Shown: positions 929 to 46,340, numbered from the stretch's first letter. The stretch: 64,000 nucleotides of DNA from Mobula hypostoma (GCF_963921235.1 NC_086124.1:27962001-28026000), one strand, 5' to 3'. Notes: generated from the letters alone by a model not told the origin. Made by a program: numbers and translations.

Positions 929-1004
929 ATGGGTCGATATTGCACTGCCTGGGCGCTCCTCCTGCTCCTCGCCGCTCGTTTGGGGACTCGCAGCTCGGCG
1001 GCCG
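929..1004 (+). CDS. Signal-peptide (leader) exon, copy 1: MGRYCTAWALLLLLAARLGTRSSAA-G, phase-1 donor
   Basis: ATG at 929 in Kozak context, hydrophobic core, small residues at the cleavage site, and donor G|GTGAGT at 1004/1005. Seven nucleotide differences from the WA leader at 34893-34968. Confidence 0.8.
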
Positions 1005-1154
1005 GTGAGTCGATTCCTGTCGCGGGGATCACCGCGCTTGGTGCAGATTGTGGGATCCTGCACAGTTCGCATTGCTGGGGTCATCAACCGGGTCGGGGGT
1101 GGGGTGTTATGGGTTGGATCTTGTTGTTTAAGGGTTAAACTTCCTGGTAAGACC

Positions 1155-2127
1155 TGTCACGTATCCCGTGATGGGAATAAAGAACCAGCAGAAATAGAAA
1201 ACGCTTTGGAGTCCAGTATTACTATTCACTAGTAATATTTATTAGAAACTACTCAATACAGTAATATAAATGTAGATAAATCAAACAGGTTAGCAATGAT
1301 TATTTATGTAAATAAGTATATCAGTAAGTGTGGAGATATAGGTGAAAAACCAAGCTTCTTCAAGTCTAAGGGTAAAAAGATACTGTCTTACGATGATGAG
1401 TAAAGTTCAGTTCAGATCATGGTGTTCAGTTGAGTAGTGATGGAGAGAGAGGGAGGGAGAGAATTGGGTCTTCAGGTGAGCTGACACCGTTGATCTCCTC
1501 GTTGTCCTCCGAAATCCTTTAAAGTCACAGACTGTGACTTCAACAAAGGGGACCAGTTTTCTGTGGTGGAGCTATCACCCAGGCAAGGGTGGACACATGG
1601 CCAACTCCCCACCGGTCACTGCCTTTTCTTTTCACTGCAGGAGCCACTGATCGATCTGCCTGATCGATCCTCCAAAAACCCACTTTTTCTGCCGGCATTA
1701 CAAAGCTCATTCAGTGTCCAAAACACATGTCTGAGGTCTATATCATCTGACCTTCTATTTATCTCACTGTACTGAGTATCAACTGTTATTCAAGTTACTC
1801 CCCCTTCCCTTCTCTGTGTAAGAAATGCAAGCAGGCAAATGTCTTTGAGAAGTATCAACATGCTGCTGAAAAATCATAACATTGATTGTCCATCAAATAA
1901 GGCTGCCTTCAGTCACCATAGCAACTTACGAGCTGCTTGGTGCCATCTCCAACTCAGCAGAAATCCAAAAGTTAGCCAGTTCTTTCTCGTGCCTTAAAGT
2001 GACAGTCCAACAGTTAGTCTTTGTCTCTCTCTCTCTCTCTTTTCAAAACAACATGTCGGTGTTAAATAACTCTCTCTCTCTCTTTTCAAAAGCACAGTTT
2101 ATAGGGGTCATTCAGGACCCCATCACA
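1155..2127. mobile_element. Solo LTR (Gypsy-like), inserted into a CR1 fragment
   Basis: TG...CA termini (tgtcac...tcaca) flanked by a 4-bp TSD gacc (1151-1154, 2128-2131). It splits the CR1 motif ctggtaagacc/acacttggagtattg. Also present in copy 2. Confidence 0.8.
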
Positions 2128-2600
2128 GACCACACTTGGAGTATTGTGTTCAGTTCTGGTTGCCTCATTACAGAGCCACATTTAATATCAGGATATTTAA
2201 ATTGGGATGTAGAAGCTTTAGAGAGTATGCTGAGGAGATTTACCAGGATTAGAGAGCCTATCTTGTGAGGTTGAGCAAGCTAGGGATTTGCTCTTTGAAG
2301 CGAAGGAGCATGAGAGGTGACTGAACAAAGATGTACAAGATAAGAGGCATTGATAGGGTGGACAGTGGAAGACTTTGCCCCAGAGTGGCAATGGCTAACA
2401 TGAAGGGGCATAACTTTAAAGTGTTTAGAGGGGGAATGTCAGAGGTAGTATATTTAGGTGTGGAACCTGGCACTGCCAAGGTTGTCATAAGGACACTTAA
2501 GAGACTCTTATAGGCACAGAGGTGACAGAATACTGGAGGCTTCTGTGTGAGGGAAGGGTTTGATTGATCGAAGGGTTGGCACAACAATGTGGACTGAAGA
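2128..2600 (+). mobile_element. CR1 LINE 3' RT/tail fragment
   Basis: RPHLEYCVQFW-type and RRFTR motifs, degenerate. Confidence 0.8.
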
Positions 2601-2945
2601 GCTGGTACTGGTCTATGCACATGGTTGGTGGGATCTTGCTGTGGACACTCAGGGATGGGGAGGGAGGAGTTGTGTAGTGGGATCTTGCCGTGCACTTGTT
2701 GGGTGGGGGCTGTGCTATGGATTGAATGGGAATTTGTTTGATTGTGCCTTGCCCGTGTTGCATGAACGCTTACCACGTGTTGACTGGATGGGGATTGTTG
2801 TAGTGTTACAGACTTGTACAACACACAACTGGACCCCTTTGCCCACCGTGTGTTTGCTGACGTTTTTGCCCATCTCCGCTCATCCCTCCCTCCCCCCCAA
2901 CACACATTAGGACCATATCCTGATGTTAAAGGTACTTCGAATATA

Positions 2946-5900
2946 ATTACAAAATAGGCTGAAGGAACTAGAAAAAAAACACAAATTGAATTTGGCACAG
3001 GATACATTAGAGGAAATTTTAAAAATTAGGAATGAAATTAATAGTTTGGCCACACAAGAAATCAGGAAAAATTTAATGTTTCTGAAGCAGAGACATTATG
3101 AAAGTGGATCTAAATCTATGAAAATACTGGCATGGAAACTGAAAAAAAAATAGCAGAAAATACAATTCATAGAATTAGGGATCCAAGAACAAAAATAAAA
3201 AAATAAGGCAAGTGAAATTCAAGAAGCTTTTGAAGTGTTTTACAATACTCTACGTTCCAAAGTTCCAGGGGGAAGCATAACCCAAATGGACACCTTCCTG
3301 AATTCGCTAGTTATCCTCTTTAAGCGAAGAACAAAATAGAACGATGACTACTGACATAACTGAAGTTGAACTAAAAGCTGAAGTTAGTAGGCTTAAATTA
3401 AGCAAGTCACCAGGATCAGATGGGTATAAGGCAGAGTGGTATAAAGAATTAAAAAATGAGTTAATTCCTGTCTTACTCCCCACACTGAACTGGGCTCTAA
3501 AATAGGCACAAATGCCACCCAGCTGGAAGGAAATGATAATCCCAGCTATACCGAAAGAAGGCAAGGATAAAATGGAATGTGGGTCATTTAGACCAATATC
3601 CGTTCTGAATGTAGATCAGGGATCAGCAACCTTTTTGCCTCTGTGGGCCGGATCGCGTATTAATAAGCGGACGGTGGGCCAGATAAATGACATAAAAAAC
3701 TTGAAATATGGGAATTATCCATTTAAATACATCTAGTTATGTTTTGCCTCAAATTAATGAATAACGCATGCTAGAAAATCATTTGTGCTTAACCAAGGAT
3801 GCCAATTAGCAATCAAAGAACTCAGTTTGGTTCTTCTGTCCCACCATTGCTGGTGCCCCATCAGTTGTGATGCTAATTAGCTTCGACACGTTAAGTTTAA
3901 TTCTGACATCATTTTCAGCAAAGCTTCAAAATTGTCTGCCCCAGTAACTGTGTCCTTCATAGGAATTATTGAATAAATTCTTCAAAAATTTGAAAACTTG
4001 AGGTCACTCCTCGCACAAACACTGCAAGTTGAGCAGTGTCTCTCAAGTCTGTACTCTCATTATGCGCAATTGAAAAAAAAATGCAATTCGTTGCGGGCAT
4101 CCCTTTAACAACTTTTAACATCTGCTGACATTTCTTCAACTCGTCGTGTGATCATTCTTGCTGACACGCTGATAGATGCAAATAAAGATTTCTTTTCAGG
4201 ACGAACAATATCCACTACTGTCCGTAAACATTCATTGACAAACTCTCCATTTGTAAAAGGCTTAATCTTTTCTGCAGTATGTTTTGAGACTTCGTAGCTG
4301 GCATGGGTATTTCCTTCATTCTCACTGCTTTTTCAGCATTCAGCGTCTACCTTCCTGCGTTTTGCATTCATTTTGCAAGTATCTCAATATTTGCTCACGG
4401 CCGGTCAAAATACCTTTGAGGGCCGGATCTGGCCCACGGGCTGTAGGTTGCCTACCCCGATGTAGATTATAGATTATTTACCTCCATCATGGCCAAACGA
4501 TTAGAAGAGTTTCTACCCATACTGATACATAGGGATCAGACAGGATTTATGCAACAACGCTATACGGAAGACAATGAATGAAGGACACTTCACGTTATGG
4601 ATCATATGCAAAAAAATAAATTTGAAGCAATAGTGATAAGCGTGGACACTGAAAAGGCATTTGATGTGGTTAATTGGAATTTTCTTTACAGAGGTTTACA
4701 TAGATTTAGTTTCCATGACGCAGTATTAAAACTATACAGGCACTATATGACAATCCTACTGCTAGGATTAAAATCAATGGATATTTATCAAATAGTTTTA
4801 CCCTAGAAAGGGGTACAGACAGGGTCGTGCATGGTCACTGCTACCCTTTGCATTATATCTGGAACCATTAGCTCAATACATCAAACGAAATGAAGATATC
4901 AGGGGAATTACTAGTAAAGGGACAGAGCATAAATTGACCTGTTACCTGGATGACATTTTGATCTATCTAGGGCAACCAACATACTCTTTACCTAAATTGA
5001 TGCAATCCTTTGAACAATATGGTCAATTATCAGGATACAAGATCAACATAGATAAAACCCAATTACTTTCATATAACTATAGCCCACCAAGAGAAATTGG
5101 AAGTAGATATCCCTGGACATGGCAAATAGTCTTTCAAATATTTCGGCATCATTATGCCAAAAGATTTGGCAAAATTATCAGAATGCAATTATCAGTTTAT
5201 ATAAAAAATTAAGGAAGATATAACAAGAGGGAACCTAATTCCTTTTTTTAGTCTCAGTTCAAGGATTGAATCTATTAAAATGAATATACTGCCTAGACTA
5301 TTATATCTCTTTCAAACTCAATCAACAGAGATTAATCAAAATCAATTCAATGAATAGAACAAGATGTTATCAACATATATATGGTACGGTAAAAGGCCTA
5401 GATTTTGTCTCAAAACTTTGCAATTAGCCAAGGAAGGGGGGGGGATGGGGCCTACCTTCTCTTAGAGATTATTATTTTGCCGCACAGTTGAGAGCTGTGA
5501 TATGTTGGTGCAACCCATCATATGACACTCAATGGAAAAACATTGAGGAGGGGATACTTCCCATCCCCATGCAGGCAATTTTGGCTGATAACCTACAAAG
5601 GCACATAAATACTATTGATAACCCATGGGTGAAATGGACTCTTAAAATATGGAAAACTATTATAAAAGAATATAAACTAGAGGGAGATATTGCAATTCTT
5701 AAATGGTGTGCATATGACTTGGATTTTACGCCAAATACACTGGATGCTGGATTTAAGGACTGGACAGCTAAAGGAATAACAGTTCTTTGCAATATAATGA
5801 AAGAAGGAACACTGTTCAGTTTTGAAATGCTTAACAGAAACACATTAGAAAAACAAGACTTTTATCAGTATTGACAGATGCGACAGTATGTTAATAGGAT

Positions 5901-6854
5901 GGTTAAAAATGTAACCAAGGTAAGTACATGTTTGATAGAGCTATTTAGAAAAGCATATAATTCAGATAATGGTAGTAGAATCATTTCAAGAGTGTACAAG
6001 GATTTGTCAAATCTTAAAACACATATGACTTCATATATCAAAACAAAATGGGAGAAGGAAGGAGGGATAATTATATCTGAGGAAGAATGGACAATAATAT
6101 GGAGGTATCAATGGAAGTGTACCAGTTCACAGAAATGGAGGGAGTTCGGATGGAAAATCTTGATAAGATATTTTGTTACACCCTCTCAGATATCCTATTA
6201 TGATGGTAACCTCCCTGTTTGCTGGAGAAATCGTGGAAACCAAAATGCAAACCATTATCATATTTTCTGGGAATGCCCCGTTATCAAAGACTATTGGAGT
6301 GGGATACACAATGCCCTACGAGACATTTTTAAATTTTAAATACCCTTAGAAAGTAAGACCATATATTTTGGGTATATACCTCAAGAATAGTTGAAAAGAG
6401 ATAAATATTTAATGAATATACTGCTGGTGGCTGGTAAAAAGACTCTTACCAGTAAATGGTTATCACAGGAGAGCCCAACTTTAAACTCATGGATGGAAAT
6501 TACAATGAACATTTACAAAATGGAGAAGATACCAGCATCTGTTGGTCTTAAGTTGGAACAATTTGATTCATACTGGGAAAAAATGGTTTAACTACATTAC
6601 ACCTCATAGACCTGATTTTATTCTCACAGATCAATGAATATGTTGTAAAAAAAAGATCACTCCCTACTTGCACATAGTTTTCTCCTTTTGCTTGTTCTTC
6701 CTTTCCTCTCTTTTCTATAAGTGCATACCTCAGATGAATATTATGTGGAGATTTGTGGCATATATGACTATATAATATACAATATCTGAAATACACCTTA
6801 TGGTAATGTTTGTTTGATGATGAACTTCAATAAAAAATAAATTACAAAAAAAAA
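2946..6854 (+). mobile_element. 5'-truncated L1-clade LINE (ORF2 RT to C-terminus, decayed) with poly(A) tail
   Basis: RT motifs ([27 protein letters not shown]), C-terminal HIFWEC zinc motif, AATAAA plus poly(A) at 6828-6854. 14-bp TSD gtact(t/c)gaatata at 2932-2945 and 6855-6868. Empty site at 37678-37691 in the paralog. Confidence 0.92.
3617..4459 (-). mobile_element. Internally deleted hAT/Charlie element nested in the L1
   Basis: Termini cagggatcagcaacc / ggttgcctaccccg, perfect 8-bp TSD atgtagat (3609-3616, 4460-4467), transposase remnants on the minus strand. Confidence 0.85.
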
Positions 6855-9589
6855 GTACTTTGAATATACTATACTTCTACACTTTGCCCATTTACGTGTC
6901 TGTCCAAATACCTTTTAAATGTAGTGATTGTGCCTGTTTCCACAGCCTCCACTAACAGCTGATTCTAGTTATCAACGATTCTTTATATAAGAAAAAAGGT
7001 CTATCCCATTGGATCCCCTTTAAAGCTCCTTCCTTTCACCTGAACTCTGTGCCCTCTCTTTTTCATTGCTTGTGGATTGATTGGGATGTTGTTGTGTAAC
7101 TGTTGAGTGAGATCTTGCCATGTACAGAAGGTTGGACCTTGTCACAGAGTGGAATAGTGTATGTGCTTTGTGCATGTATATAAATGGGCGAGTTATTTCT
7201 AGCCGAGTCATTAGACGCACTACATAAAGAATAGGAAATTTTCTCAATATCCCAGGGCTAATACTTAGCCCACTATCAACATCCAAAACATATGCTTTTG
7301 GTCTCGATTTCCTGCCTGTTCTCTATAACTCATGACTCTGTATAGATCTCAAACATCTATCTTCGTCTTAATTATATTCAATGGCCCGAGCTTCTTAGCT
7401 TTCTACGCCTTGTATTTTCACTTGCTTCATTCATGAGTTCAAGTCTTTTGCCTCATTCAATATGAGAGGCTGATCAGTAAACACTCAATATGAAATCTAA
7501 TCATTTAACTCCAAGACCTGGGCCTCAATACCCCCTTGTGCAACACACCTACATGAAACGTTGCTGTAGAAAAGCAGCATGAATCAACAAAAACCCTCAC
7601 TGTCCCGGTCATGCTCTTTTCTCACTGCTGCCATCGGGTAGAAGGTACAGGGGCCTCAGGACTTGCGCCACCAGGTTCAAGAACAGTTAGTATCCCTCAA
7701 ACTTCAGGCTCTTGAACAAGAGGGGATAGCTACACTCACTTAAGGACTCTGTTATATTGTTATTTCATGCTCATTATTTATTGCTATTTATTTGTATCTG
7801 CATTTGCAGGATTTATTTACAGTTAACAGTTCCTGATGTTTGCAGTTGCTGTTCTATAGATTTGCCAAGTATGTCCACAGATGAGCTACAGCAGCAAAAG
7901 ATCACGAACATATACTGAGTGTCTATTTTATTCAGTACAGGAGATATCTAATAAAGTGGCCACTGAGTGTGAGTTGGTGTTTGTGTTTAATGTCCATACT
8001 CAAGGTCTGCTCTCCAGTTGCACTGGAATTCCTCACTATTGACCAAGACCTCACTCCTGTCAACATCATGTGGTAAATGATGTACAGGAGGCACTCCGCG
8101 TTAAAAATATTTACCATCTGAAGTAGCATGTCATTTTCAGCCTAAGAAGACATACTCATAAAAACATTGGTATAATGAAAGTAATTCTAGTATTCACAGT
8201 ACATTTATTATCACAGTGTATATACAGAAAACAATTCTGCAGGGTATAGCATTCTTTGCTGAAGCAACGCAGATTGCATAGATTGTCCTGATCAAACGAC
8301 TCAAAAATGGCTTTTTAAAAAAAAAAGTAACCAGTATCCAGGCACATATCCAATATGAACTGCAGAGTATTCCAAAATGAGTCTCCAATTGACCCTTGCA
8401 ATGTTGATCCCAAGACTCCTGCATTTCCCTCCGACAGCAGGTGGTGAGGGGGAGAGGAAAACCAATCATACACCGGCAGGTTGAATCAAGGTTGAATATC
8501 TGCTCGTCCTCGATGCTCATCCTCATTGACTTCAACCTTGCTGAATGCTTCAACTGGAGAAAAGCAATGGAGTTAGTCATGGGCTCGTACCCTTGATGCC
8601 TCAGTTGAAGAAAAGCAACAGTCTCGATCATGTTTCTAGGCCACACACTGTTCCAAACCTGACTGAATTTCCTTGGAGACAGCAAAGCACTAGATTGCTC
8701 AACCAGTCCAAAAACACACCATCAAAATGTAAATTATAGGTTCCAATGGCACGCCGATTAATAGTGGAACCTCACTTGGAAGATGATGAAGTAAAAGAAG
8801 CATATTTGTGAACTGTCAGCAGGACATTGTCGTTGTTCATGCTGTTCGCTGGGTCATCTTGTGTGAACTAAACTGGAATCATAACGTCACTGTTGTGAAA
8901 CACTTTATGATCCCTCTTGGGTTGTAAGAGATCTCCATTACAGCGCCAGCTGGCGAACTGGGTCTTCCTTTATTACTCAACTAGATTCAACTCCATGTCT
9001 TAAAGAGAGATTAGCTTTGTTTGTCATGTCGAACATACAGTTAAATGCGTCATTTCCATCAATGGCCAACACTGTCCAATGATGCGCTGGGGGGTTGGGT
9101 GGGGTCACACTTCCTGAGGCAACAGCTTACTCACAATTTACTAATCCTAACCCGTATGCCCTTGAGACACAGGACAGTGTTCAGGTACACCACAAGAAAC
9201 TGTTGGCTGTGTTTCTGGAAGTTAGAATGAGGGATGTTAATCCAGAGGGTGTGGAACAGTAAAATCTGGGGGTAACAACAGCTTAGGTGGGGGTTTTGCT
9301 AGGTGGAAGGCAGGGTGGAGTGAATGATGATCAGCTCGCGGACAGAGTTGGTTTTTGTGAGCATGCCACACATGTGATTTAAAATGTAGGGAGTTAACAA
9401 CAACATCAAGTCTACAAACTGGTTCAGGTTCTGATACTTGGAGACAGATAGAGTCAGTGTCTGAGACTGAGGAAGTGACGCGGACCAGCAGCAAAAAAAA
9501 AAACGAGTCCAGCTATTTGCTATGAATACACTAAGAAATGGTTTTCAGGGCTGTTTCAGGATTTAAGCTTCAGAATTTTATTTATTTAT

Positions 9590-10176
9590 TTATTGTGATA
9601 CAGCATGGAATAGGTCCTTCTGGCCCTTTGAGCCACACCACCCAGCAGTTCCCAATTTAATCTTAGCCTAATCACGAGACAATTTACGATGACCAATTAA
9701 CCTATCAATCGGTACATCTTTGGAATATGGGAGGAAACCCATGGGGCATGGGGAGAACATATAAACTTATAGGCAGTGGCAGGAATTGAACCCAAGTCAC
9801 CTGTACTATAAAGCATTGTGCTAACCACTACACTACTGTGCTACCCCATCTTGATCTTTAACAGTTCAGACCAGGAATTTGGTGAGCATTTTCATGAACT
9901 GTTTCCTCTCACAGACGGCATGGTAGTGCAACTCTTTACAGTGCCTGTGATTGAGGTTCATTTCCTGCTGCAGTCTTTATAGCATTTGTATGTTCTCCCT
10001 ATGACCCCATGGGTTCTCTCCCACATTCCAAAGACACACATTAGGGTTAGTAAGTTGTGGGTTGGCGATGGAAGCGTGCTGACACTTATGGCTGTCCTGC
10101 ATAATTCTCAGATTGTGGTAGTTGATACAAACGATGCACTTCATGGTATGTTTCAATGTACATGTGACAAATAAAA
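9590..10176. mobile_element. Head-to-head pair of tRNA-derived V-SINE/HE1-like SINEs (minus 9590-9848, plus 9917-10176)
   Basis: tRNA-like A/B boxes (gtagtgtagtggttagcac...gggttcaattcc), central ttctcccc...tcccacattccaaagac domain and tgtgacaaataaa tail. The same pair occurs at 40545-41133. Confidence 0.75.
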
Positions 10177-12266
10177 CTGATTTGCAATGAGATACAGAAC
10201 CTTTGAGTACAGTATTCGCAACCTGTTTTTATTCTGCATCCTAATGCAATGATACTCGCCCTGCTTTCTGCATTTTGCCCAAACATCTGTCTATCCTTCC
10301 TAATAATCTGACTGCATGCTACTTTTGTTGTTTTAACACCTTTCATATCCTGAGTCCCTTTACTCGGTTTCCCATCCCTGTGCTAAATTAGTGTCAACCC
10401 TCCCCAACAGCTCTAACAAACCAGCGTGAGAGAATATTTGTCCCTCTCAGGGTCATGTGCAATGTACAGGTCACCCCTCCTTGATTTGGATTTCTAGCAT
10501 CTGCAGATTCTTTTTTCCTGTTTGTGAAATGAATGTGCTTGACTATGGCCGTACCTTAGCAGCTTGAACTGAGAAAATATAAAAAAAATACGACCGTAAT
10601 AGTAAATAAGTAATAAATACCGAAAAGATGTGGTGAGGAAGTGAGGGGTTCTTGAAATCTTGTCACAGGTTGTGGTAACAGTTCAGTGAAGGGGTAAGTG
10701 AAGTTGTGAGGTTGTACCCTTTGGTTCAAGAGCCTTGTGCTTGGGGGGTAATTACTGTCCTGAACCTGATGGTATGAGTTTTGAGGGTCTTATACCTTCT
10801 TCCTGATGGCAGCAGCAAAAAGAGAGCATGACCTGGGTGATGGTTTGCCTGGGGAAGGATGCTGCTTTCTTGCGACAGCACACAGTGTTGATGTGCTCAA
10901 TGGAGAAAACAGTTTTATTCCTGATGGACTTGGCCATATATACTGCTTTTTGTAGGAATCTCCCTTTAAGGATATTGGTGTTCCTTGCCAGAACGTAATG
11001 CATTCAGTTATTATGCGTTCCACCACACAAGGATAGAAATTTGCTGAAGTTTCAGATTTGATGCAAGGAATGCATCGGTCAGGACTGCATTCTTTGCAGG
11101 TGGAAGATTGAGGCAAGATTTGATGGAAGTGTAACCCTCAGATTCAGTCGGCGACGTAAGTCGAGGGAAGACAATCTCTGGCCCCGCCAAATGTGTGAAC
11201 TTTGAGGTGCAAAACCTCTTGTTTGTGTGGATGCTGTGTGGTTCTCCTGTTACAAATCAGTACCACAGAATAATGGACTGTACACCATAGGCAATTAAAT
11301 GATTTAGCTGTTTGATTCTTAATTTGACTAAAGGGTTAGTAAAGAAAAACAAAAAGAAAAGAGCCCATTTTAATGAAACAGTCTAATGTGTGCAAGTTGG
11401 AGTTCACGGTTTCCCTCCTGCTGGTCCTCCATCGATTTCCCTGGCCGTCGTCGACTTCTGGCCCCACTCCAAGGCCACTGCTTTCTGGTGTCTACGAACT
11501 CTTCTTTCTGGCATCTTCTCTCTCCATCTTTTGCCGATAACAAAGCCCAGATTACCTCGGTGGCAGGCATACAGCATGAAAACACACTCTCCTCATTGGA
11601 CGGCCAACATCTCTAACCATAACCCAAACACTGCTTCTACAGAAAGACCATGACATTAGCAGTGAAACTTTTCCCAGGGTGTTACTCTTTCCCCACCCTC
11701 CCCCCACCAAATTTAGTGATGTCCTCATGACATTGAGATAATGTACCAACCCTGCGTGCAAAGAACAAAGTTCATCCCAGGTGTAAAAGGCAGTGACATA
11801 GATCCTCTGAATGATCTCCTCACTCTCCCGTACAAGCTGAAGTTCTTGCAGCTGCTGCTCCCGATCCATAGCACAGTCTTGCAGTATCTGCAGCTGGATG
11901 CACCTCACGCACATGTAGTCGCCCAAGGGGCTCCCAAGACTCCAACATCAGGAGTGAATAACCCACAAAGGCCTTTTAAACTATAGTAAGTATGTCTGAC
12001 ACAACAAGAAGAAAGAGAAACATAACAAACTCAGACAGACAAGTTACCCAGAGCCAGTGCCTCTTCTGTGCCGACGACTCCTTTGAGCCAGTGCTTGACA
12101 ATCTACTTCCTCCTGTAGCCCGTCCCAACAATCAGCGCTCCAACAATGCTGGCTCCGCTTGTGCAAGCATTCACATGTTGTGTTATGGCCAGGAGCCTGG
12201 AATTGAACATACCTGTAAGCGAAACTCTGAAAAATATAATAATTTCTTCTTTGAATGTCATTCCAG

Positions 12267-36218: not shown

Positions 36219-36962
36219 CAGCGGTCCCCAACCACTGAGCCGCAGATCATGTGCTACCGGGCTGTGAGGAAACAATATGAGTCAACTGCACCTTTCCTCA
36301 TTCCCTGTCACGCACTGTTGAACTTGAACATAGGGTTGCCAACTGTTCCGTATTTGCTGGGACATCCTGTATATTGGGCTAAATTGGTTTGTCCCATACG
36401 GGACCGCCTTGTCCTGTATTTCCCCTGCTAAGGTAGAGCATTCTTATGAAACCTTTCATGCCAAAATGGTTTGAAGCGAAGAAGCAATTACCATTAATTT
36501 ATATGGGAAAACTTTTTGAGCGTACCCAGATCCAAAAAATAACCTACCAAATCATACCAAATAACACATAAAACCGAAAATAACACTAACATATAGTAAA
36601 AGCAGGAATGATATAAATACACAGCCTATATAAAGTAGAAGTAATTTATGTACAGTATAGTCGGGAAGATGAAGGCAAAACCGATTTGTCGAAAAAAATC
36701 GACACTTACGTGCATGCGCACACAGGTTCCCGCGCAAGGCTTCATGGTCATGGTAGTCTTCCTTGGGGTAATGTGTCCTGGGATTTGACTGCTACTTTCG
36801 TCCCTTATTTGGGAGTGAGAAAGTTGGCAACCCTAACTGTAACAGACATGTTGAGGTGAGTTTAACCCTACCTGAACCCCCCCCCCCCCCCGGTTGGCCG
36901 ATCCACAAGAATATTGTCAATATTAAACCAGTCTGCGGTGCAAAAAAGGTTGGGAACCCCTG
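36219..36962. mobile_element. hAT MITE with a second nested hAT MITE (tagggttgccaac termini, about 36332-36838)
   Basis: Termini cagcggtccccaacc / ggttgggaacccctg, perfect 8-bp TSD ctttagag (36211-18, 36963-70). Empty site at 2216-2223 in copy 1. Confidence 0.88.
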
Positions 36963-39900
36963 CTTTAGAGAGTATGCTGAGGAGATTTACCAGGATTAGA
37001 GAGCATGTCTTGTGAGGTTGAGCAAGCTAGGAATTTGCTCTTTGAAGCGAAGGAGCATGAGAGGTGACTTAAAGATGTAGAAGATAAGAGGCATTGATAG
37101 GGTGGACAGTGGAAGACTTTGCCCCAGAGTGGCAATGGCTAACATGAAGGGGCAAAACTTTAAGGTGTTTAGAGGGGGAATGTCAGAGGTAGTATATTTG
37201 GGTGTGGAACCTCGCACTGCCAAGGTTGTCATTAAAGACATTGAAGAGACTCTTATAGGCACAGAGGTGACAGAATACTGGAGACTTCTATGTGAGGGAA
37301 GGGTTAGATTGATCAAAGGGTTGGCACAACAATGTGGACCGAAGAGCTGGCACTGCGATCTGCTGTTCTATGCACATGGTTGGTGGGATCTTGCTGTGGG
37401 CATGTAGGGATGGGGAGGGAGGAGTTGTTTAGTTGCATTTGTTGTGTGGGGGCCGTGTTATGGATTGAATAGGAATTTGTTTGATTGTGCCTTGCCCATG
37501 TTGCATGGACGCTTGCCACGTGCAGACTGGCTGGGGGTATTTTAGTGTTATAGACTTTTACAACACACAACTGGACCCTTTTGCCCACCATGTGTTTGCT
37601 GACATTTTTCTCCATCTATGCTAATCCCATCCCCCCCCCCCCCGCACCACCATTAGGACTGTATCCTGATGATACATGTACTTTGAATATACTTATACAC
37701 CTTGCCCCTTTACGTGTCTGTCCAAATACCTTTTAAATGTAGTGATTGAGCCCATTTCCACAGCCTCCGCTGGCAGCTCATTCTAGATATCAACCATTCT
37801 TTATGTAAGAAAAAAGGTGTACCCCCTCGGATCCCCTTTAAAACTCCTTCTTTTCACTTGAAATCAGTGCCCTCTTATTTCCATTTTGTATGGATCGGTT
37901 GGGATGTTGTTGTGTAACTGCTGAGTGGGATCTTGTCATGTACACAAGGTTGGACCTGATCACAGAGTGGGATTGTGTTTGTGCTTTGTGCATGTATATA
38001 GATGGGTGAGTTATTTTTGGGTGAGACATTAGACACGCTACATACAGAGTAGGGAACTTTTCTCAATATCCTAGGGCCAATGCTTATCCCACTATCAATG
38101 TCCAAAACATACGATTTTGTTCTCGATTTCCTGCCTGTACTCTATCACTCATGACTCCCTATAGATTGCAAACATCTCTCTTCATCTTAATTATATTCAA
38201 TGGCCCGAGCTTCTTAGCTTTCTATGCCTTGTATTTTCACTTGCCTCGTTCACGAGTTCAAGTCTTTTGCCTCGTTCAATATGAGAGGCTGATCAGTAAA
38301 CACTCAATATGAAATCTAATCAGTTAACTCCAAGACCTGGGCCTCAATACCCCCTTGTGCAACACACCTACATGAAACGTTGCTGTAGAAAAGCAGCATG
38401 AATCATCAAAAACCCTCACTGTCCCAGTCATGCTCTTTTCTCACTGCTGCCATCGGGTAGAAGGTACAGGGGCCTCAGGACTCGCACCACCAGGTTGAAG
38501 AACAGTTAGTATCCCTCAAACTTCAGGCTCTTGAACAAGAGGGGATAGCTACACTCACTTAAGGACTCTGTTATATTGTTATTTCATGCTCATTATTTAT
38601 TGCTATTTATTTGTATCTGCATTTACACTGTTTATTTACAGTTAACAGTTCCTGATGTTTGCAGTTGCTGTTCTATAGATTTTCCAAGTATGTTTGCAGA
38701 CAATGAATCTGAGGGTTGTATGTGGTGACATCGATGTACTCTAATAATCAATTTTATTTTGACTTTGAGATCAGAGGAGAATGTCCAAACTGGTTTCAGC
38801 TGACTCAACAGTAACTCAAATAACCATGTGTTACAATAGTTGTGTGCAGACGAACATCCCTGAATGCACAAACTGTCAAACCTTGAAGTGGATGACCTAT
38901 AGCAGCAAAACATCATGAACTCAGTGTTTATTTTATTAGGTACAGGAGATATGTAATAAAGTGGCCACTGAGTGTGAGTAGGTGTTTGTCTGCGTTCATG
39001 TTTAATGTTCATACCCAAGGTCTGGTATCCAGTTGCATTGGAATTCCTCACCATTGACCAAGACCTCACTCTTGTCAACATCATGTGGTAAATGAAGTAC
39101 AGGAGCCACTCCACTTTAAAAATATTCACATGAGGTAGCATGTCATCTTCAGCCTAAGAAGTCATACTCATAAAAAAATATTGGTATGATGCAAATAATT
39201 CTGATATTCAAAGTACATTTATTATCAAAGTGTATATACGGAAAAACATCTCTGCAGGGTATAGGATTCTTCACTGAAGCGACCCAGATCGCATAGATTG
39301 CCCTGATCAAAGTGCTCAGAAATGACTTTTTAAAAAAAAAAGGAGTAACCAGAATCCAGGAACATATCCAATATGAACCGCAAAGTCTCCCAAAATGAAT
39401 CTCCAATTGATCCTTGCAATGTTGATCCCAAGACCCCTGCATTTCCCTCCGACAGCAGCTAACAAGAGGGAGAGGAAGACCAATCATACACCGGTTGAAC
39501 TTCTGCTCTTCCTTGATCATCCTCGTTGACTTCAACCTTACTCAATGCTTCAGATGGAGAAAAGCAAGTGTCGATCATGTTTCCAGGCCACACATCCTGC
39601 TCCAAACCTCACTGAATTTCCTTGGAGACAGTAAAGCACCAGATTGCTCAACTAGTCCAAAAACACGTCATCAAAATGTAAATTGCAGGTTCCAATGGCA
39701 CGCCGATTAATAGTGGAACTTCATGTGAAATACGAAGGAGTAAAAGAAGCATATTGGTGAACTGTCAGCAGGACGTCGACATTGTTGTGTTGTTTGCTGG
39801 GCCATCTGTGTGAACCAAACTGGAATCATAACGTCACTTTTGTGAAACACCTGATCCCTCTTGGGTTGTAAGAAATTTCCATTACAGTGCCAGCTGATGA

Positions 39901-40544
39901 CCTGGGTCTTCCATTATTATTTAACTAGATTCGACTCCGTCCTAAAGAGAGATCAGCTTCGTTTTGTCAAGTGTACATTGAGTATACAGTTACGTGCGTT
40001 GTTTCCATCAATGGCCAACACAGTCCAATGATGTGCTGGGGGGTGGTGGGGGTCACACTTCCTGAGGCAACAGCTTACTCACAATTTACTAATCCTAACC
40101 CGTATGTCTTTGAGACACAGGACAGTGTTCAGGTACACCACAAGAAACAGTTGGCTGTGTTTATGGAAGGTAGAATGAGGGATGTTAATCAGGAGGGTGT
40201 GGAACAGTAAAATCTGGGGTAACAACAGCATGGGTGGGTGTTTTGCCAGGTGGAAGGCAGGATGGAGTGAATGATGATCAGCTCGTGGACAGAATTGCTT
40301 TTTGTGAGCATGCCACACAAGTGATTTAAAATGTAGGGAGTTAACAACAACATCAAGTCTACAAACTGGTTCCGGTTCAGATACTTGGAGACAAATAGAG
40401 TCAGTGTTTGAGACTGAGGCAGTGATGGGGACTAGCAGCAAAAACAGCCGAGACCAACTATTTGCTATGAAACACTAAGAAATGCTGTTTAGGGCTGTTT
40501 CAGGATTTAAGCTTCAGAATTAATTAATTGATTGATTGATTGAT

Positions 40545-41133
40545 TGTGATACAGCATGGAATAGGTCTGTCTGGCCCTTCGATCTGCACCACCCAGCAGT
40601 TCCCAATTTAATCTTAGCCTAATCACATGACAATTTACAATAACCAATTAACCTATCAACTGGTACATCTTTGGAATATGGGAGGAAACCCATGGGGCAT
40701 GGGCAGAACATATAAACTCCTTACGGGCAGTGACAGGAATTGAATCCAAGTCGCCTGTACTATAAAGCATTGTGCTAACCACTACACTACCATGCTACCC
40801 CATCTTGATCTTTAACAGTTCAGACCAGGAACTTGGTGAGCATTTTCATGAACTGTTTCCTCTCACAGACGGCATGGTAGTGTAACTCTTTACAGTGCCT
40901 GTGATTGGTTCAATTCCTGCCGCAGTCTTTATGGCATTTGTATGTTCTCTCCATGACCATGTGGGTTCTCTCCCATATTCCAAAGACGTACACATTAGGG
41001 TTAGTAAGTTGTGGGTTGGCGCTGGAAGCATGGTGACACTTATGGCTGTCCAGCACAATCCTCAGACTGTGTTGGTAGTTGACACAAACAATGCATTTCA
41101 CTATGTGTTTCAATGTACATATGACAAATAAAA
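40545..41133. mobile_element. Head-to-head V-SINE/HE1-like pair, paralog of 9590-10176
   Basis: Same architecture. Further family copies near 44790-45100, 45480-45715 and 58095-58352. Confidence 0.75.
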
Positions 41134-42484: not shown

Positions 42485-42739
42485 AGACAGACAAGTTGGC
42501 AGTCACCTTCTTCGTTACAGATGACCCCAGCCTGCCAGAGGGTGGAGCTGAGTTGAAGACCCAGGAGAGAAGTATAGCTTACTATGACACCACATCACCG
42601 AGTGTTCAGTTTCACTTGTCTGGCTTAGACCCATTCCGTTTACCTATGGATAAGCTATTAGCAGGAAATGTGCTCGCATGGGTAAAGTACCTGATGAGCG
42701 GGGCGATGTTATTAACCAACAACTCTCTTCCCCCAAATG
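42485..42739 (+). CDS. WA: MHC W-category alpha chain, exon 2 (alpha1 domain)
   Basis: Acceptor tttttatttctcag|, donor G|GTGAGT, 255 nt, phase 1-1, open frame (TDKLAVTFFVTDDPSLPEGGAELKTQERSIAYYD...LLTNNSLPPN). Class II alpha1-like length and position. Confidence 0.8.
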
Positions 42740-44349
42740 GTGAGTCAAGATAGGAACGTGAGCAGCTCAGTGTACTGACTACCATCAGTCCAATAAAGCG
42801 TCCCCAGTATGGATTTAGCTCACAGTACAGGTCCTTTGGCCCACCATGTTGTGATGACCTTTCAAACTACACCAAGATCAACCTAACCCTTTCACTTACA
42901 CAGTCCTCCAATTTCCTTTCATTTGTGTGCCTTTCTAAGAGTTTCTTAAATGCCCCTAATTTATCCACCTCCTCCACCACCCCTGGCCGGGTGTTCCACG
43001 CACCCACTAACCAGAGTTTTATAGAGCTGCAACATTACCACTCAGCTCTTGAACTCAAAACTCTTCATCCGACGTTACACCTCCTGACTCCTCTCCTGGT
43101 ACTTTCCTCCAAACACAAAGTTATTCCATATTATATTAGCCATTTCCACCCTGTGAAAAAGTCTTTGGATATCCACTCTATCTATACCTCTTATTATCTT
43201 GTACACCTCTATCAAGTCACTGCTCATCCTCCTCCTCTCTGACAAGATAAGCCCTAGCATACTCAATTTATCCACATGAGACATGTTTTCTAATCCAGAC
43301 ACCATCCTCTACACTCTCTCTAAAGCTCTGCATCTTTCCTATAGTGAGGCGACCAGACCTAAACCCAAAACACCAAGTATGGTCTAAACATTTCCATGTG
43401 GCTCTTGAACTCAAACCCCAAACTGACACAGGCCAACACATTACCTGCCTTCTTAAGATTCATTTCACTGACTACTTTCATTAGAAATTTGAGTTAAGAG
43501 CGTGTGCACAAATGGCTGGCACTGTGGTGCACTGGCATAATTAATCCTTTGTTGTATTAGGGTACTACTGGCAGTTAGTTCCGTGGCTCCATCAAATAGA
43601 TGATATGAACATTGATTGTCAAATGGCAGATGATTAACAAGCTTCCGCTTTATCTGCTTGCAGTAGAATGTTTCTGGCTGTCTTCTTTACTCTGCAGAAA
43701 CACTGAATTTCAAAAGTAAATTTTATATTGTTGGCATTGCTGAAGGGAATTACATGGACTTGGTTCGCTATCTTCCCACTATGGTTGTGTTGCCGGCAGT
43801 GAGTCGGCAGTCCCAGTAAACAGTGGATCATGTACTCTTCTTGCTGCTGCTATCATGAAGAAGTACAGGAGCCTCAGGACTGACACCACCATATTCAGGA
43901 ATACTGTAGCTATTACCCCATCAACCATCAGACTCCTGAATCAGTGGTAATAACTTCACTTGCCCCATCGCTGAAATGTTCCCACACCTATGGAGTCGCT
44001 TTCCAGGACGCTTCATCTCATATTTTTGATATTTATTGCTTATTTATTTCTTGTTATTATTTTTTTCTTCTGTATTTGCACAGTTTGCTGTGTTTTACAG
44101 ACAGGTTGTTTGTCCACCCTGTTGGGTGTGGTCTTCCATTGATTCATTTATGGTTATTGGATTTACCAAGCATGCCCACGAGAAATCAAATCTCAGGGCT
44201 GTATATAGTGAAATGTATGTGCTTTGATAATAAATTTACTTTGAACTGTAGAACTTTGAAAGAAAATATGACTGAAGTGGATTAATAGATATTAATCATC
44301 ATCTAGTGCAATTGACATTTACAAAAAAATCTTTAATTTGTTGTTTTAG

Positions 44350-44631
44350 AAATCGGTGAGCTCTATCTGTACTCAGAGAAACCAGCTGTCTTCGGGGAGG
44401 TAAACACTTTGACCTGTTTCGTCAGCGGCTTTTTCCCACCGGCCGTAATTGTAACGTTGCAGAAGAACAAGAAGCCTGTCAATGGCGAAGTTAACTCCTC
44501 ACACCTCTCATTTGGCAAAGATTGGCGATTTCAAGTGCTCCACTACACATACATCCAGCCAGCAAACGGTGACGTATACTCTTGTAGAGTGCTCCATAAC
44601 ATCAGCAAAGAGGAAAAAGTAGTTTACTGGG
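44350..44631 (+). CDS. WA: MHC W-category alpha chain, exon 3 (alpha2 Ig-C1 domain with beta-2-microglobulin-type residues)
   Basis: 282 nt, phase 1-1, canonical splice sites. LYLYSEKP...NTLTCFVSGFFPPAVIVTLQKN...HLSFGKDWRFQVLHYTYIQP...YSCRVLH...VVYW. The LSFGKDWRF motif matches b2m LSFSKDWSF, and Leu replaces the C-strand Trp as in b2m. Confidence 0.92.
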
Positions 44632-46167
44632 GTAAGAGAATTGAACCATGCTGTTATGGTTATTATTCTATAGATTTGCTGAGTATGTCTACAGGAAAAT
44701 CAACCTCAGGGTTGTATATGGTGATGTATATGTACTTTGATAATAAAATTACTTTTTGAACTTTGAAATGCTCTGGGGTAAATGATAAAGGGCAGCACAG
44801 TAGCATGATGGTTGGCGCAGTGCTTTACAACACCAACTAAAATTGAGATTCGATTGCTGTCTGTAAGGAGTTTGTATGTTCTTACCGTGACTGCATAGGT
44901 TTTGTCCAAGTGCTCTGCTTTCTTCCTACATTCCTAAGATTGGGTTAAAGTTACTGAGTTGTGGGCTTGCTCTGTCGGCACCAGCAGAATGGCGGTATTT
45001 GTGGGCTGCCCTCAGCACAATCCTCACTGATATGATTTGATGCAAAAATGATGCATTTCTCTGAATGTTTTGATCTTTCAATGTACATGTGACAAATAAA
45101 GCTAATCTCTGAAATCCAGCTCATTGCCTGCAGTGCTGACTGACAATGTTTTCCAGTGGAAGTGTTGTTGAGATCAGGATTTTAGCAAGTACGAGGACAA
45201 GCTTCCGTTAGCACATTTCAGCTGGCGTTGTACCACTCCAACCCGAGCTGGAGCCTAGCAATAGATTCAATAATGAGGGGTAGTGTTGAAGCACTCCATC
45301 CTGGATGAGATTGGTTTTAACCCTCTTGTTGCTCTGTTAGGCCAGTGGGAGGAAAAGCAGCCCAGGTTCCTGCTTACACTCAGTATTCAGCAATTCCCAG
45401 TGGAACGTGAAGGATGCAACGTGACTATTTGGGCTTTATGTCGATCAACCCCATTGCTCATGTTGCTTTTTTTTTAGTGATGCAGCTCGGAAAGGGCCGT
45501 TCCAGCCGCAGTGCTCAGCAGCTCCTGATTTTTAACAATGACAGATTAACCTACCAATTGGTACGTCATTAGACTGTGGGAGTAAACTGGAGCACCTGGA
45601 GGAAACCCAGTCCATCATGGGGAGAACATACCAACTACTTGCAGACAGCTGCAGGAATTAAACCCCGTCACTGGTATTGTAAAGTGTTGTGCCAACCTCT
45701 GCATTACTGTGCCATTGTTAGTTGACAGCCATTTAATCACAAAGTCACAGAAAAGTACAGCACAGAAGCAGGACCTTTGCCCCATCTAATCTGCCCACTC
45801 CCTTTGACCGTAGCCCTACCATCCCTGTATCTTTCCAAACTTCTCTTAAACACCGAAATCGAGCTTGCATCCACCACTTCTGCTGGGAGCTTGTTCCACA
45901 CTCTCACAGCTGTCTGAGTGAAGAAGTTTCCCCTCATGTTCACCTTTTACCCTTCATCCATGAGCTCCAGTTGTAGTCCCATCCAACCTCAGGGAAAAAA
46001 GCCTGCTTGCATTTATCCCATCTATACCTGTTGAAAAGTATTTTCAGCCGAGAATGGGGAACACGAGAAACCCAAGAGGACAATTTAGTTTCGCCAGCTC
46101 ATCTTTGTTCAAACTGATTTTAAAACTAGTTCCTTGTTTAAAATATAATTGTGTGCTTTGTTCACAG

Positions 46168-46340
46168 AACCAGAAGAACAAAGTCGTGCTGAAGGACTGG
46201 ATACAAGCCAGATTGCTGTTTTGATCTGTGGGCTGATTATAGGAATACTTGGCACAGCAGCTGGATTCTACTTATGTTTTTCGTTGCTACTGTCTGGCTG
46301 GAGCTCTTTGATAATTCGGATCAATACTCCTTCTCAATGA
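46168..46340 (+). CDS. WA: MHC W-category alpha chain, exon 4 (connecting peptide, TM, short tail, stop)
   Basis: Acceptor ttgttcacag|, phase 1. EPEEQSRAEGLDTSQIAVLICGLIIGILGTAAGFYL... has the class II alpha TM Cys/Gly pattern. TGA at 46338-46340. The spliced ORF is 76+255+282+173 = 786 nt, or 261 aa. Confidence 0.88.

What the first reader, a model, noticed from the sequence alone, without database searches (positions are those of the whole stretch)
929..46340. Possible SRCR-SRCR-WA read-through fusion (scavenger receptor domains on an MHC alpha chain)
No TM or terminal exon for the SRCR module is visible between 17045 and the WA promoter; that interval is almost all transposon sequence. The next strong phase-1 acceptor on the same strand is WA alpha1 (42485). 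The WA leader at 34893 is a first exon with no evident acceptor, so a read-through transcript would skip it. Splicing 929-1004, 12267-12581, 16730-17044, 42485-42739, 44350-44631, 46168-46340 gives an uninterrupted 1416-nt ORF (471 aa): leader-SRCR-SRCR-alpha1-alpha2-TM. The phase compatibility is seen directly. That the transcript is actually made is pure hypothesis, since phase 1-1 is generic for Ig and SRCR exons.
Basis: inference. Interest (0 to 1): 0.8.

Follow-up and report, generated by a model that had tools for sequence, protein, structure and literature searches.

The report
Duplicated MHC-W leader capturing SRCR exons
In a devil-ray MHC "W-category" locus, a second copy of the alpha-chain gene's promoter and signal-peptide exon lies upstream of two stray scavenger-receptor (SRCR) exons; these could in principle splice into the alpha chain, but nothing shows that they do, and the normal alpha-chain gene is intact on its own.

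Summary
The exon arithmetic is correct. The six exons have AG/GT borders and join into a 1416-nt ORF of 471 aa: leader, two group-B SRCR domains, W-alpha alpha1, a beta2-microglobulin-like C1-set alpha2, and TM. The open frame carries no information, because every exon is phase 1-1 and all cassette combinations (261, 366, 366, 471 aa) are open.

- Window 1-10176 is an 85-91% identical copy of 33934-41133. It copies the WA core promoter, the leader and about 7 kb of intron 1.
- The "SRCR leader" is therefore a duplicated WA leader.
- The SRCR exons are a 2.5-unit fragment of an SRCR exon array, broken about 65 bp before its third exon.

No fusion is supported:
- RNA-like contigs showed only SRCR>SRCR joints from paralogous arrays.
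- The manta model, 95% identical, is a canonical 261-aa WA with the proximal-type leader.
- About 17 WA relatives lack SRCR.
- A stingray retrocopy and the sawfish locus are also canonical.

One lead remains open. The manta annotation holds a 2,637-aa model with SRCR domains followed by C1-set. I could not retrieve it.

Verdict: this is a partial duplication that created an exon-shuffling intermediate, and the fusion stays unproven. The scan noted the same stretch before as s1-141921.

The parts
1..10176 (+). Distal copy (A) of the WA 5' region: core promoter, leader exon and about 7 kb of intron 1. It carries a 3.9-kb insertion at 2950-6854 relative to the proximal copy and probably continues upstream of the window.
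   Evidence: Self-BLAST: 1-2223~33934-36218 (90.2%), 2215-2949~36962-37695 (87.9%), 6855-7874~37678-38693 (91.1%), 7880-10176~38891-41133 (85.2%).
721..743 (+). Conserved core-promoter block with a Y box (CTGATTGG), distal copy.
   Evidence: The block is shared by both ray copies and by the sawfish WA/WB bidirectional promoter in L001.
929..1004 (+). Leader exon 1 (76 nt, phase-1 donor GTGAGT), a duplicate of the WA leader.
   Evidence: 20 of 25 aa and 69 of 76 nt are identical to 34893-34968, and the first 12 intron bases after the donor are identical. The MGRY..AWALLLLL motif is shared with WA proteins of manta and stingrays.
10186..21395 (+). Fragment of an SRCR exon array: 2.5 repeat units of about 4.4 kb.
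   Evidence: Unit-to-unit matches: 10186-10699~18086-18615, 11808-12994~16313-17453, 14005-14606~17451-18052, 15471-16669~20207-21395.
12267..12581 (+). SRCR exon 1 (group B, 8 Cys, phase 1-1).
   Evidence: PF00530 E 6e-34; splice borders.
16730..17044 (+). SRCR exon 2 (group B, phase 1-1, with an extra Cys at domain residue 11).
   Evidence: PF00530 E 9e-36. Best solved relatives are CD163, PIT54, CD5L, CD6 and DMBT1. It is 89.8% identical in nucleotides to exon 1, with dN/dS 0.78.
18086..21395 (+). Third SRCR unit, truncated about 65 bp before the place where its SRCR exon should start.
   Evidence: Three-unit alignment. No third SRCR exon anywhere in the window by tblastn.
26675..30748 (+). 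Decayed LINE in sense orientation (endonuclease, RT, zf-RVT ORF fragments).
   Evidence: Pfam Exo_endo_phos, RVT_1 and zf-RVT; all hits are below the curated cut-offs, as expected for a decayed element.
32142..33594 (-). Transposase-like ORFs (DUF4371, hAT-type).
   Evidence: Pfam DUF4371, E 7e-5.
33934..41133 (+). Proximal copy (A') of the WA 5' region; it carries the working WA promoter and leader.
   Evidence: Same self-BLAST matches as for copy A. The Y-box block is at 34664.
34716..34892 (+). Possible 5' extension of the leader-2 exon if the acceptor at 34713-34715 is used by a read-through transcript. The resulting 253-nt exon (34716-34968) breaks the frame.
   Evidence: Pyrimidine tract plus CAG|G, present only in the proximal copy. 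Joined translation stops at residue 333. This is an inference; no RNA evidence.
34893..34968 (+). Leader exon 2, the canonical WA first coding exon.
   Evidence: One residue different from the leader of the manta WA protein P0011, against five differences for leader 1.
42485..42739 (+). WA alpha1 exon.
   Evidence: phmmer hits only WA-type chains of sharks and rays; splice borders.
44350..44631 (+). WA alpha2 exon (C1-set, beta2-microglobulin-like).
   Evidence: PF07654 E 2e-19. Every PDB hit among the 60 listed matches through a beta2-microglobulin sequence, alone or in engineered MHC class I/CD1/MR1 fusions.
46168..46340 (+). WA connecting peptide / TM / cytoplasmic exon with the stop codon.
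   Evidence: ORF and homology to P0011.
63074..63262 (-). C1-set exon of the downstream WB gene, tail-to-tail with WA.
   Evidence: tblastn of alpha2: 35% identity, E 4e-10. Earlier notes s1-142106 and s1-144949.

Best explanation
The locus is a canonical W-category alpha-chain (WA) gene: proximal promoter, leader at 34893, then alpha1, alpha2 and TM, giving 261 aa. A partial segmental duplication sits upstream of it.

At least 10 kb of the WA 5' end exists as a second copy that is 9-15% diverged. It contains the conserved Y-box core promoter, the leader exon and about 7 kb of intron 1. Directly behind this copy lies a 2.5-unit fragment of a group-B SRCR exon array, broken just before its third exon. 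About 12.5 kb of LINE and hAT debris follows.

The distal leader plus the two SRCR exons therefore form a 5' gene fragment without a 3' end of its own. It is an exon-shuffling intermediate.

The WA protein is made from the proximal leader, as in the manta. If the distal promoter fires, its transcripts have three options: end in transposon sequence, retain the intron after 17044, or splice onward into WA. In the last case the in-frame 471-aa product follows automatically from phase-1 symmetric exons and is not evidence of design.

Shown: the duplication, the truncated array, the intact canonical WA and the WA origin of the distal leader. Inferred: which promoter is used, and the fate of distal transcripts.
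For: - Duplication of 1-10176 against 33934-41133 at 85-91% identity.
- Leader 1 belongs to the WA leader family (the MGRY..AWALLLLL motif in manta, Hypanus and Hemitrygon WA). Leader 2 is one residue from the manta leader.
- The core-promoter block with the Y box is conserved between sawfish and both ray copies.
- The SRCR region is a repeat-unit fragment whose third unit breaks about 65 bp before its exon. No further SRCR, TM or WA-like exon lies between 17045 and 42485.
- The two SRCR exons are no more conserved than their introns (89.8% against 82-91%), and dN/dS is 0.78.
- The window's WA built from leader 2 is 95.4% identical over its full length to the 261-aa manta model P0011. That is the longest product of its gene and no gene overlaps it.
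- None of the 5, 10 and 11 WA relatives, covering lengths 152-675 aa, has an SRCR domain.
- The Hemitrygon protein P0015 is encoded by an intronless 786-bp retrocopy with leader-alpha1-alpha2-TM only.
- The sawfish WA locus L001 has no SRCR exon.
- RNA-like contigs over the SRCR exons carry only SRCR>SRCR joints and fixed differences from the window.
Against: - The distal promoter core, ATG, signal peptide and donor are all intact, and both SRCR exons are intact with all 8 cysteines. The distal unit is therefore not visibly dead.
- No terminal exon for it exists in the window. The mini-exon that ends the manta model P0016 lacks its AG in unit 3 here. That makes splicing into alpha1 the simplest productive outcome.
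- In the manta annotation, a 2,637-aa model with SRCR...SRCR then C1-set starts 308 bp behind the two-SRCR model P0016. An SRCR array chained to an Ig C1 domain is thus at least predicted in the sister species.
- Expression of the proximal and distal leaders was not measured here.
Confidence: 0.55

Rival explanations
1. There is a real SRCR-SRCR-WA isoform. The distal copy acts as an alternative promoter and first exon of one long WA gene, and the SRCR exons are cassette exons. The result is a 471-aa membrane alpha chain that pairs with WB and carries two pattern-recognition SRCR domains on the N-terminus of alpha1.
For: - All exons are on the same strand and phase-compatible, and the ORF is open.
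- The distal core promoter, leader and donor are intact.
- There is no other 3' exon for the SRCR module.
- The manta has a predicted 2,637-aa SRCR...C1-set model next to the homologous SRCR pair.
- N-terminally FLAG-tagged WA still reaches the cell surface with WB in Okamura et al. 2021 (PMC8713811), so an N-terminal addition is tolerated in principle.
Against: - No 17044>42485 joint and no 12581>16730 joint was seen in the contigs laid.
- No SRCR domain occurs in any WA relative of 152-675 aa.
- The manta WA gene's longest product is 261 aa.
- The SRCR exons evolve about neutrally.
- The array is a broken fragment.
- The 25-kb 'intron' holds a sense-oriented LINE, 19 AATAAA motifs, an internal promoter and a good acceptor at 34715 that would break the frame.
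- Only about 6 residues separate the last SRCR cysteine from the first alpha1 strand.
Confidence: 0.18
2. The distal unit is a stand-alone gene for a small secreted two-SRCR protein (CD5L-like or DMBT1-like). It is driven by the captured WA promoter and ends by intron retention or a cryptic polyadenylation site shortly after SRCR2.
For: - Reading through the donor at 17044 adds 26 residues and a stop at 17122-17124. An AATAAA lies at 17351.
- The manta annotation has a separate 248-aa two-SRCR model, P0016, made of SRCR1-like and SRCR2-like domains in the same order.
Against: - P0016 starts at an intronic ATG and ends in an intron-derived mini-exon. It therefore looks like a split piece of an array model and not an RNA-supported gene.
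- No contig coverage was seen over 17100-17299 in any run.
- The same donor and downstream sequence follow SRCR1, where they must be spliced.
Confidence: 0.12
3. The distal unit is transcriptionally silent or makes only nonsense transcripts. It would then be a dead by-product of duplication, and the intact ORFs simply reflect its young age.
For: - Near-neutral divergence of the SRCR exons and of the leader.
- The truncated array.
- No locus-specific RNA contig was found. The best SRCR1 contig, with 1 mismatch in 101 nt, aligns two bases into the acceptor AG, as expected if the preceding exon ends in ..AG like an SRCR exon and not ..CG like leader 1. The contig's 23 upstream letters were not shown, so this is an inference from alignment coordinates.
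- SRCR2 carries a private Arg>Cys change that is absent from all RNA contigs.
Against: The conserved promoter block is as well kept in the distal copy as in the proximal one: the distal copy keeps the sawfish-like TTCCCGCC, while the proximal copy has TTCCCTCC. There is no stop or frameshift in 706 nt of coding exons at about 10% divergence.
Confidence: 0.3
4. The array is collapsed or misjoined in the assembly. In reality it continues with many SRCR exons, as in the manta model, and the break at 21395 is an artefact.
For: In the manta, a long SRCR model begins exactly where the window's third unit breaks. Tandem 4.4-kb units are hard to assemble.
Against: The window has no N runs. The sequence beyond the break runs on without gaps into ordinary transposon sequence. 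No read-level test was possible.
Confidence: 0.07

Closest known systems
W-category MHC alpha chain (WA) of Okamura, Dijkstra et al. 2021 (PMC8713811)
   Same: The proximal gene has the class II alpha layout: leader, alpha1, a C1-set alpha2 and CP/TM/CY, with one exon per part. Its Ig domain is beta2-microglobulin-like. A WB gene lies nearby, and there are multiple WA/WB copies, as in the great white shark cluster.
   Different: A duplicated promoter and leader, plus two SRCR exons, lie 18-34 kb upstream on the same strand. The paper mentions no SRCR. The local WB is tail-to-tail, not the head-to-head arrangement typical of the family.
Group B SRCR exon arrays (CD163/M130, WC1/SCART, DMBT1, CD5L)
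   Same: Eight-cysteine SRCR domains, each on a single phase 1-1 exon, inside tandem repeat units. The best solved relatives are CD163, PIT54, CD5L, CD6 and DMBT1.
   Different: There are only two exons plus a broken third unit. There is no TM or cytoplasmic exon, and no CUB or ZP domain. The signal peptide is borrowed from an MHC gene.
Young chimeric genes made by partial duplication and exon shuffling (for example jingwei in Drosophila, TRIM5-CypA in primates; from general knowledge)
   Same: The promoter and first exon of one gene have been placed in front of domain exons of another, with compatible intron phases.
   Different: Transcription and function of the chimera are not shown here. 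The donor gene remains intact immediately downstream on the same strand, so read-through into it is possible.
Manta (Mobula birostris) gene models: P0016 (248 aa, two SRCR) and its downstream neighbour (2,637 aa, SRCR...C1-set)
   Same: P0016 has an SRCR1-like and then an SRCR2-like domain. The second is 91.5% identical to the window's SRCR2. The first, aligned together with the translated intron upstream, is 85% identical. Its neighbour chains SRCR domains to a C1-set domain.
   Different: The manta array goes on for roughly 20 or more domains, whereas the window's stops after two. The manta models start at intronic ATGs. I could not establish whether they are orthologous to this locus, or whether the C1-set domain is WA alpha2.

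Membership tests
W-category MHC alpha chain (WA) | Class II alpha-type architecture: signal peptide, membrane-distal domain, C1-set Ig domain, CP/TM/CY, one exon each | tested here: met
   Exons 34893-34968, 42485-42739, 44350-44631 and 46168-46340 give 261 aa. C1-set E 2e-19.
W-category MHC alpha chain (WA) | Ig-like domain resembles beta2-microglobulin rather than class II alpha2 | tested here: met
   Every PDB match among the 60 listed aligns to a beta2-microglobulin sequence, alone or in engineered fusions (E about 1e-25 to 1e-18). NCBI names the Hemitrygon homologue 'beta-2-microglobulin-like'.
W-category MHC alpha chain (WA) | Sequence clusters with published WA sequences | tested here: inconclusive
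   The alpha1 exon hits only a small set of shark and ray chains that NCBI names class II alpha-like. I made no direct comparison or tree with the sequences of PMC8713811. Earlier follow-up notes call neighbouring copies WA.
W-category MHC alpha chain (WA) | Linked WB partner gene | tested here: met
   A C1-set exon lies on the minus strand at 63074-63262. Notes s1-142106 and s1-144949 describe WB there. The orientation is tail-to-tail, not the usual head-to-head.
Group B SRCR domain | About 100 residues, 8 conserved cysteines, one exon per domain, phase 1-1 | tested here: met
   PF00530 full-length matches. Eight Cys in each domain, plus one extra in SRCR2. 315-nt exons with phase-1 borders.
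Membrane SRCR receptor (CD163 / WC1 type) | Own TM and cytoplasmic exons after the SRCR array | tested here: not met
   No such exon is recognisable between 17045 and 42485, and the array breaks at 21395.
Expressed fusion (chimeric) gene SRCR-WA | Transcript with the junctions 1004>12267, 12581>16730 and 17044>42485 | tested here: inconclusive
   Contigs of three RNA-like runs laid on 12100-18099 show no 12581>16730 joint and no 17044>onward joint, only paralog-type SRCR>SRCR joints.
Expressed fusion (chimeric) gene SRCR-WA | The same architecture in annotated proteins of relatives | tested here: not met
   No SRCR Pfam domain in any WA relative of 152-675 aa. The one candidate, the 2,637-aa manta model, lies outside the searchable length range, and its C1-set domain is not shown to be WA.

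The most novel reading that the evidence does not exclude
Mobula rays make W-category MHC alpha chains with scavenger-receptor (SRCR) domains on the N-terminus of the ligand-binding alpha1 domain. This would be a two-domain version at this locus and a domain-array version in the manta's 2,637-aa SRCR...C1-set model. It would join an innate pattern-recognition module to an MHC-type heterodimer by exon shuffling into intron 1.
Probability: 0.1. Interest if true: 0.85.

Novelty: new variant of a known kind. Interest (0 to 1): 0.4.

Why it matters
W-category MHC molecules were described only in 2021, and their ligands and function are unknown. A natural WA chain carrying SRCR domains would be an unprecedented MHC architecture and a strong clue to what these molecules do.

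What is actually shown is more modest but still useful. It is a clean, datable example of how such a chimera could arise. The promoter, signal-peptide exon and 5' intron of an MHC gene were duplicated and now sit in front of phase-compatible domain exons from an expanding SRCR array, with the parent gene still intact downstream.

It is also a caution for annotation. In loci built of phase 1-1 exons, long in-frame 'fusions' come for free, and gene predictors may chain them.

Tried and rejected
1. RNA evidence.
- Both run searches found only small 'RNA?' Logan-contig runs.
- The single read-laying run covered 12100-18099. It showed exon-confined coverage, but from paralogous arrays: joints 17044>16731 and 12579>12265, and fixed differences giving C11R, P54S, K75N and R95G.
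- It gave no information on 17044>42485. I do not treat this as evidence of absence.

2. Manta and stingray DNA. Look-ups for P0005, P0010, P0011, P0012, P0013, P0015 and P0016 returned gene tables but no DNA, because the files are too large. Only the sawfish locus L001 gave DNA.

3. The 2,637-aa manta model could not be retrieved. The length window of the search for homologous proteins needs a query of at least 1,507 aa, and no such related protein id was available. I did not try to get around that limit.

4. The spliced 471-aa and 261-aa proteins have no single reference, so they were not sent to the protein databases, structure prediction or complex prediction. They were analysed only in local scripts.

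5. Other searches:
- A search for further SRCR, alpha1, alpha2 or TM-like exons in the window found none.
- Rfam gave no match.
- Tandem repeats in 17-35 kb showed nothing relevant.
- The literature search found no paper on an SRCR-MHC fusion or on the Mobula MHC.

6. Rejected: that the leader at 929 is an SRCR-family leader copied to WA. It carries the motif shared by stingray, manta and devil-ray WA leaders.

7. Rejected: that the manta SRCR...C1-set model simply overlaps the manta WA gene P0011. Overlapping genes are listed by the look-up, and none overlaps P0011.

Full report
**Observation**

Each internal exon is preceded by AG and followed by GT. Joined, they give a 1416-nt open frame of 471 aa that ends at the TGA at 46338-46340.

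- Pfam confirms two full-length SRCR domains (PF00530, E 6e-34 and 9e-36) and a C1-set domain for the alpha2 exon (E 2e-19). The alpha1 and TM exons have no Pfam family.
- A full-library phmmer search with the alpha1 exon returns only seven proteins. Five are real matches, and all five are short class-II-alpha-like chains of sharks and rays.
- Every PDB match among the 60 listed for alpha2 aligns to a beta2-microglobulin sequence, alone or in engineered fusions. That is the hallmark of the W-category alpha chain (Okamura et al. 2021, PMC8713811).

The open frame itself is no evidence. All exons are symmetric phase 1-1 and each is open on its own. The combinations leader1-alpha1, leader1-SRCR1-alpha1, leader1-SRCR2-alpha1 and leader1-SRCR1-SRCR2-alpha1 are all open, at 261, 366, 366 and 471 aa.

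**What the locus really is**

A self-comparison shows that window 1-10176 is a copy of 33934-41133. The matches are:
- 1-2223 ~ 33934-36218, 90.2%
- 2215-2949 ~ 36962-37695, 87.9%
- 6855-7874 ~ 37678-38693, 91.1%
- 7880-10176 ~ 38891-41133, 85.2%

The match starts at window base 1, so the copy probably extends further upstream. The "SRCR leader" at 929-1004 is therefore a duplicate of the WA leader at 34893-34968. The two share 69 of 76 nt and 20 of 25 aa, both exons are 76 nt long, and the first 12 intron bases after the donor are identical.

The direction of the copying is clear. The MGRY..AWALLLLL leader is shared by WA proteins of manta, Hypanus and Hemitrygon, so it is a WA leader and not an SRCR leader.

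A core-promoter block of about 30 nt with a Y box (CTGATTGG) is conserved between the sawfish WA/WB bidirectional promoter (locus L001) and both ray copies, at 721 and 34664. In both ray copies a transposon fragment occupies the place where the sawfish has the WB leader.

**The SRCR module**

Behind the distal copy lies a block of about 4.4-kb repeat units (10186-21395):
- Unit 1 carries SRCR1.
- Unit 2 carries SRCR2.
- Unit 3 (18086-21395) stops about 65 bp before the point where its SRCR exon should begin.

tblastn finds no third SRCR exon and no further alpha1, alpha2 or TM-like exon anywhere in the window. Beyond the break there is a decayed sense-strand LINE (endonuclease, RT and zf-RVT fragments, 26675-30748) and a transposase-like element on the minus strand (32142-33594). 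The SRCR part is thus a broken piece of a longer array, without a TM exon or any terminal exon.

The two SRCR exons are 89.8% identical. Their flanking introns are 82-91% identical, and dN/dS is 0.78. Selection on the exons is therefore not visible, although all eight cysteines are kept. The closest solved relatives are CD163, PIT54, CD5L, CD6 and DMBT1.

**Relatives**

Earlier follow-up notes of this scan identify the genome as the lesser devil ray and describe a cluster of WA/WB copies around this window. I checked this only through the 95% match to manta proteins.

- The window's WA built from the proximal leader (261 aa) is 95.4% identical over its full length to a 261-aa Mobula birostris protein (P0011). 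P0011's leader differs at one residue from leader 2 and at five from leader 1.
- P0011 is the longest product of its gene, and no other gene is called within 10 kb of it.
- Searches covering candidate lengths of 152-485 aa and 212-675 aa found 10 and 11 WA relatives. None has an SRCR domain.
- Hemitrygon P0015 is encoded by an intronless 786-bp gene inside another gene. It is a retrocopy, and so a fossil of a canonical leader-alpha1-alpha2-TM mRNA.
- The sawfish WA locus has no SRCR exon in intron 1 or in the 10 kb upstream.

**The one positive lead**

The closest relative of the SRCR exons is the manta protein P0016 (248 aa). Its first residues are the translation of the intron just upstream of SRCR1 (window 12185-12266). 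It continues with an SRCR1-like and then an SRCR2-like domain. It ends in 12 residues that map to an intron piece about 390 bp upstream of each SRCR exon, at 11833, 16338 and 21064.

In the window, only the unit-2 copy of that piece has an AG acceptor. The unit-3 copy, the one a transcript leaving SRCR2 would meet, does not.

In the manta, a gene on the same strand starts 308 bp behind P0016. Its 2,637-aa product has Pfam hits for SRCR...SRCR and then C1-set. The 308-bp spacing matches the distance from that intron piece to the intronic ATG before the next SRCR exon. The annotation has therefore probably split one long array into two models.

I could not retrieve this protein or its DNA. Whether the C1-set domain is WA alpha2, whether the chain has RNA support, and whether the locus is orthologous to this window or to the SRCR array 3.78 Mb upstream (note s1-144944) all remain open. 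It does not overlap the manta WA gene P0011 (overlapping genes are listed by this tool).

**RNA**

Two run searches found only small runs whose library type is not on record (listed as 'RNA?'). About 12% of the words of 12000-17300 are held, which is about the size of the two exons, and 4-7% of the WA stretch.

I laid four runs on 12100-18099. In the three RNA-like runs:
- Coverage sits on the SRCR exons and on transposon pieces. It is zero in the intron bins 12700-12899, 16500-16699 and 17100-17299. This looks like RNA.
- The contigs over SRCR2 all differ from the window at the same sites, giving C11R, P54S, K75N and R95G. They also differ from P0016.
- The only SRCR joints are 17044>16731 (with an A in place of the window's T at 16730) and 12579>12265. 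These are SRCR-to-like-SRCR junctions, as expected from long paralogous arrays.
- No 12581>16730 joint and no joint or listed loose end leaving 17044 for elsewhere was reported.
- The best SRCR1 contig (1 mismatch in 101 nt) aligns from 12265. This fits a preceding exon ending in ..AG (SRCR type) and not ..CG (leader 1). The contig's upstream letters were not shown, so this is an inference from alignment coordinates.

So there is no evidence that this locus's SRCR module is transcribed. This is not evidence of absence.

**Mechanistic considerations (inferred)**

If the distal promoter fires, leader 1 will splice to SRCR1 and SRCR2. The transcript then faces 25 kb containing a sense LINE, 19 AATAAA motifs and the proximal promoter.

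It also meets a good acceptor that exists only in the proximal copy: a pyrimidine tract followed by CAG|G at 34713-34715. That acceptor would include a 253-nt exon and shift the frame, with a stop at residue 333.

Retaining the intron after 17044 would add 26 residues and a stop. Splicing to alpha1 would give the 471-aa chain, with only about six residues between the last SRCR cysteine and the first alpha1 strand. N-terminally FLAG-tagged WA does reach the cell surface with WB (PMC8713811), so an N-terminal addition is not excluded.

**Verdict**

The fusion is unproven, and I judge it unlikely to be a major or selected product.

- About 0.18: a detectable fusion transcript exists.
- About 0.1: the strong version, a functional SRCR-bearing W chain in Mobula.

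The best-supported reading (0.55) is a partial duplication of the WA 5' end that captured a truncated fragment of an SRCR array. This left an exon-shuffling intermediate upstream of an intact canonical WA gene. It is a new variant of a known kind of event at a little-studied locus. The same stretch was already noted in this scan as a chimeric promoter/leader-SRCR unit (s1-141921), and my duplication analysis agrees with that reading.

Noticed in passing
Manta (Mobula birostris) 40.55-Mb contig of GCA_030028105.1, directly downstream of the P0016 gene (no DNA held): A 2,637-aa gene model whose Pfam hits run SRCR...SRCR and then C1-set. It starts 308 bp after a 248-aa two-SRCR model that begins at an intronic ATG. 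It is probably one long array split by the annotation, and it is chained to an Ig C1 domain of unknown identity.
   Followed up: partly
Hemitrygon akajei 214-Mb contig of GCA_048418815.1 (protein P0015; no DNA held): A full-length 261-aa WA protein is encoded by a 786-bp, apparently intronless gene that lies inside a 729-aa Ig-domain gene. It looks like a processed WA retrocopy with an intact ORF.
   Followed up: partly
window 16762 (SRCR2, domain residue 11): The window has TGC (Cys, a ninth cysteine). All RNA contigs, SRCR1 and the manta protein have Arg at this position, which looks like a private CpG-type change in this copy.
   Followed up: partly
window 13900-15500: A high-copy repeat inside the SRCR1-SRCR2 intron is very heavily represented in the RNA-like runs (summed word depth up to about 44,000), with many contigs ending at 15472/15473. 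It is likely an active or abundantly transcribed transposon family.
   Followed up: no
L001:9600-10010 (Pristis pectinata), and window 640-760 and 34580-34700: The compact bidirectional WA/WB promoter of the sawfish has 280 bp between the two called genes. It shares a block of about 30 nt containing a Y box with both ray copies. In the rays a LINE-like fragment replaces the WB leader side.
   Followed up: partly
Proteins P0136-P0138 (Carcharodon carcharias, Cetorhinus maximus): WA-like models of 345-439 aa, two of which (P0136, P0137) carry extra Ig_2/Ig_3 hits beside C1-set. These may be merged WA/WB models or genuine extra-domain isoforms in lamniform sharks.
   Followed up: no
window 30909-31074: An 86-bp unit repeated 1.9 times (95% match) just 3' of the decayed LINE.
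   Followed up: no
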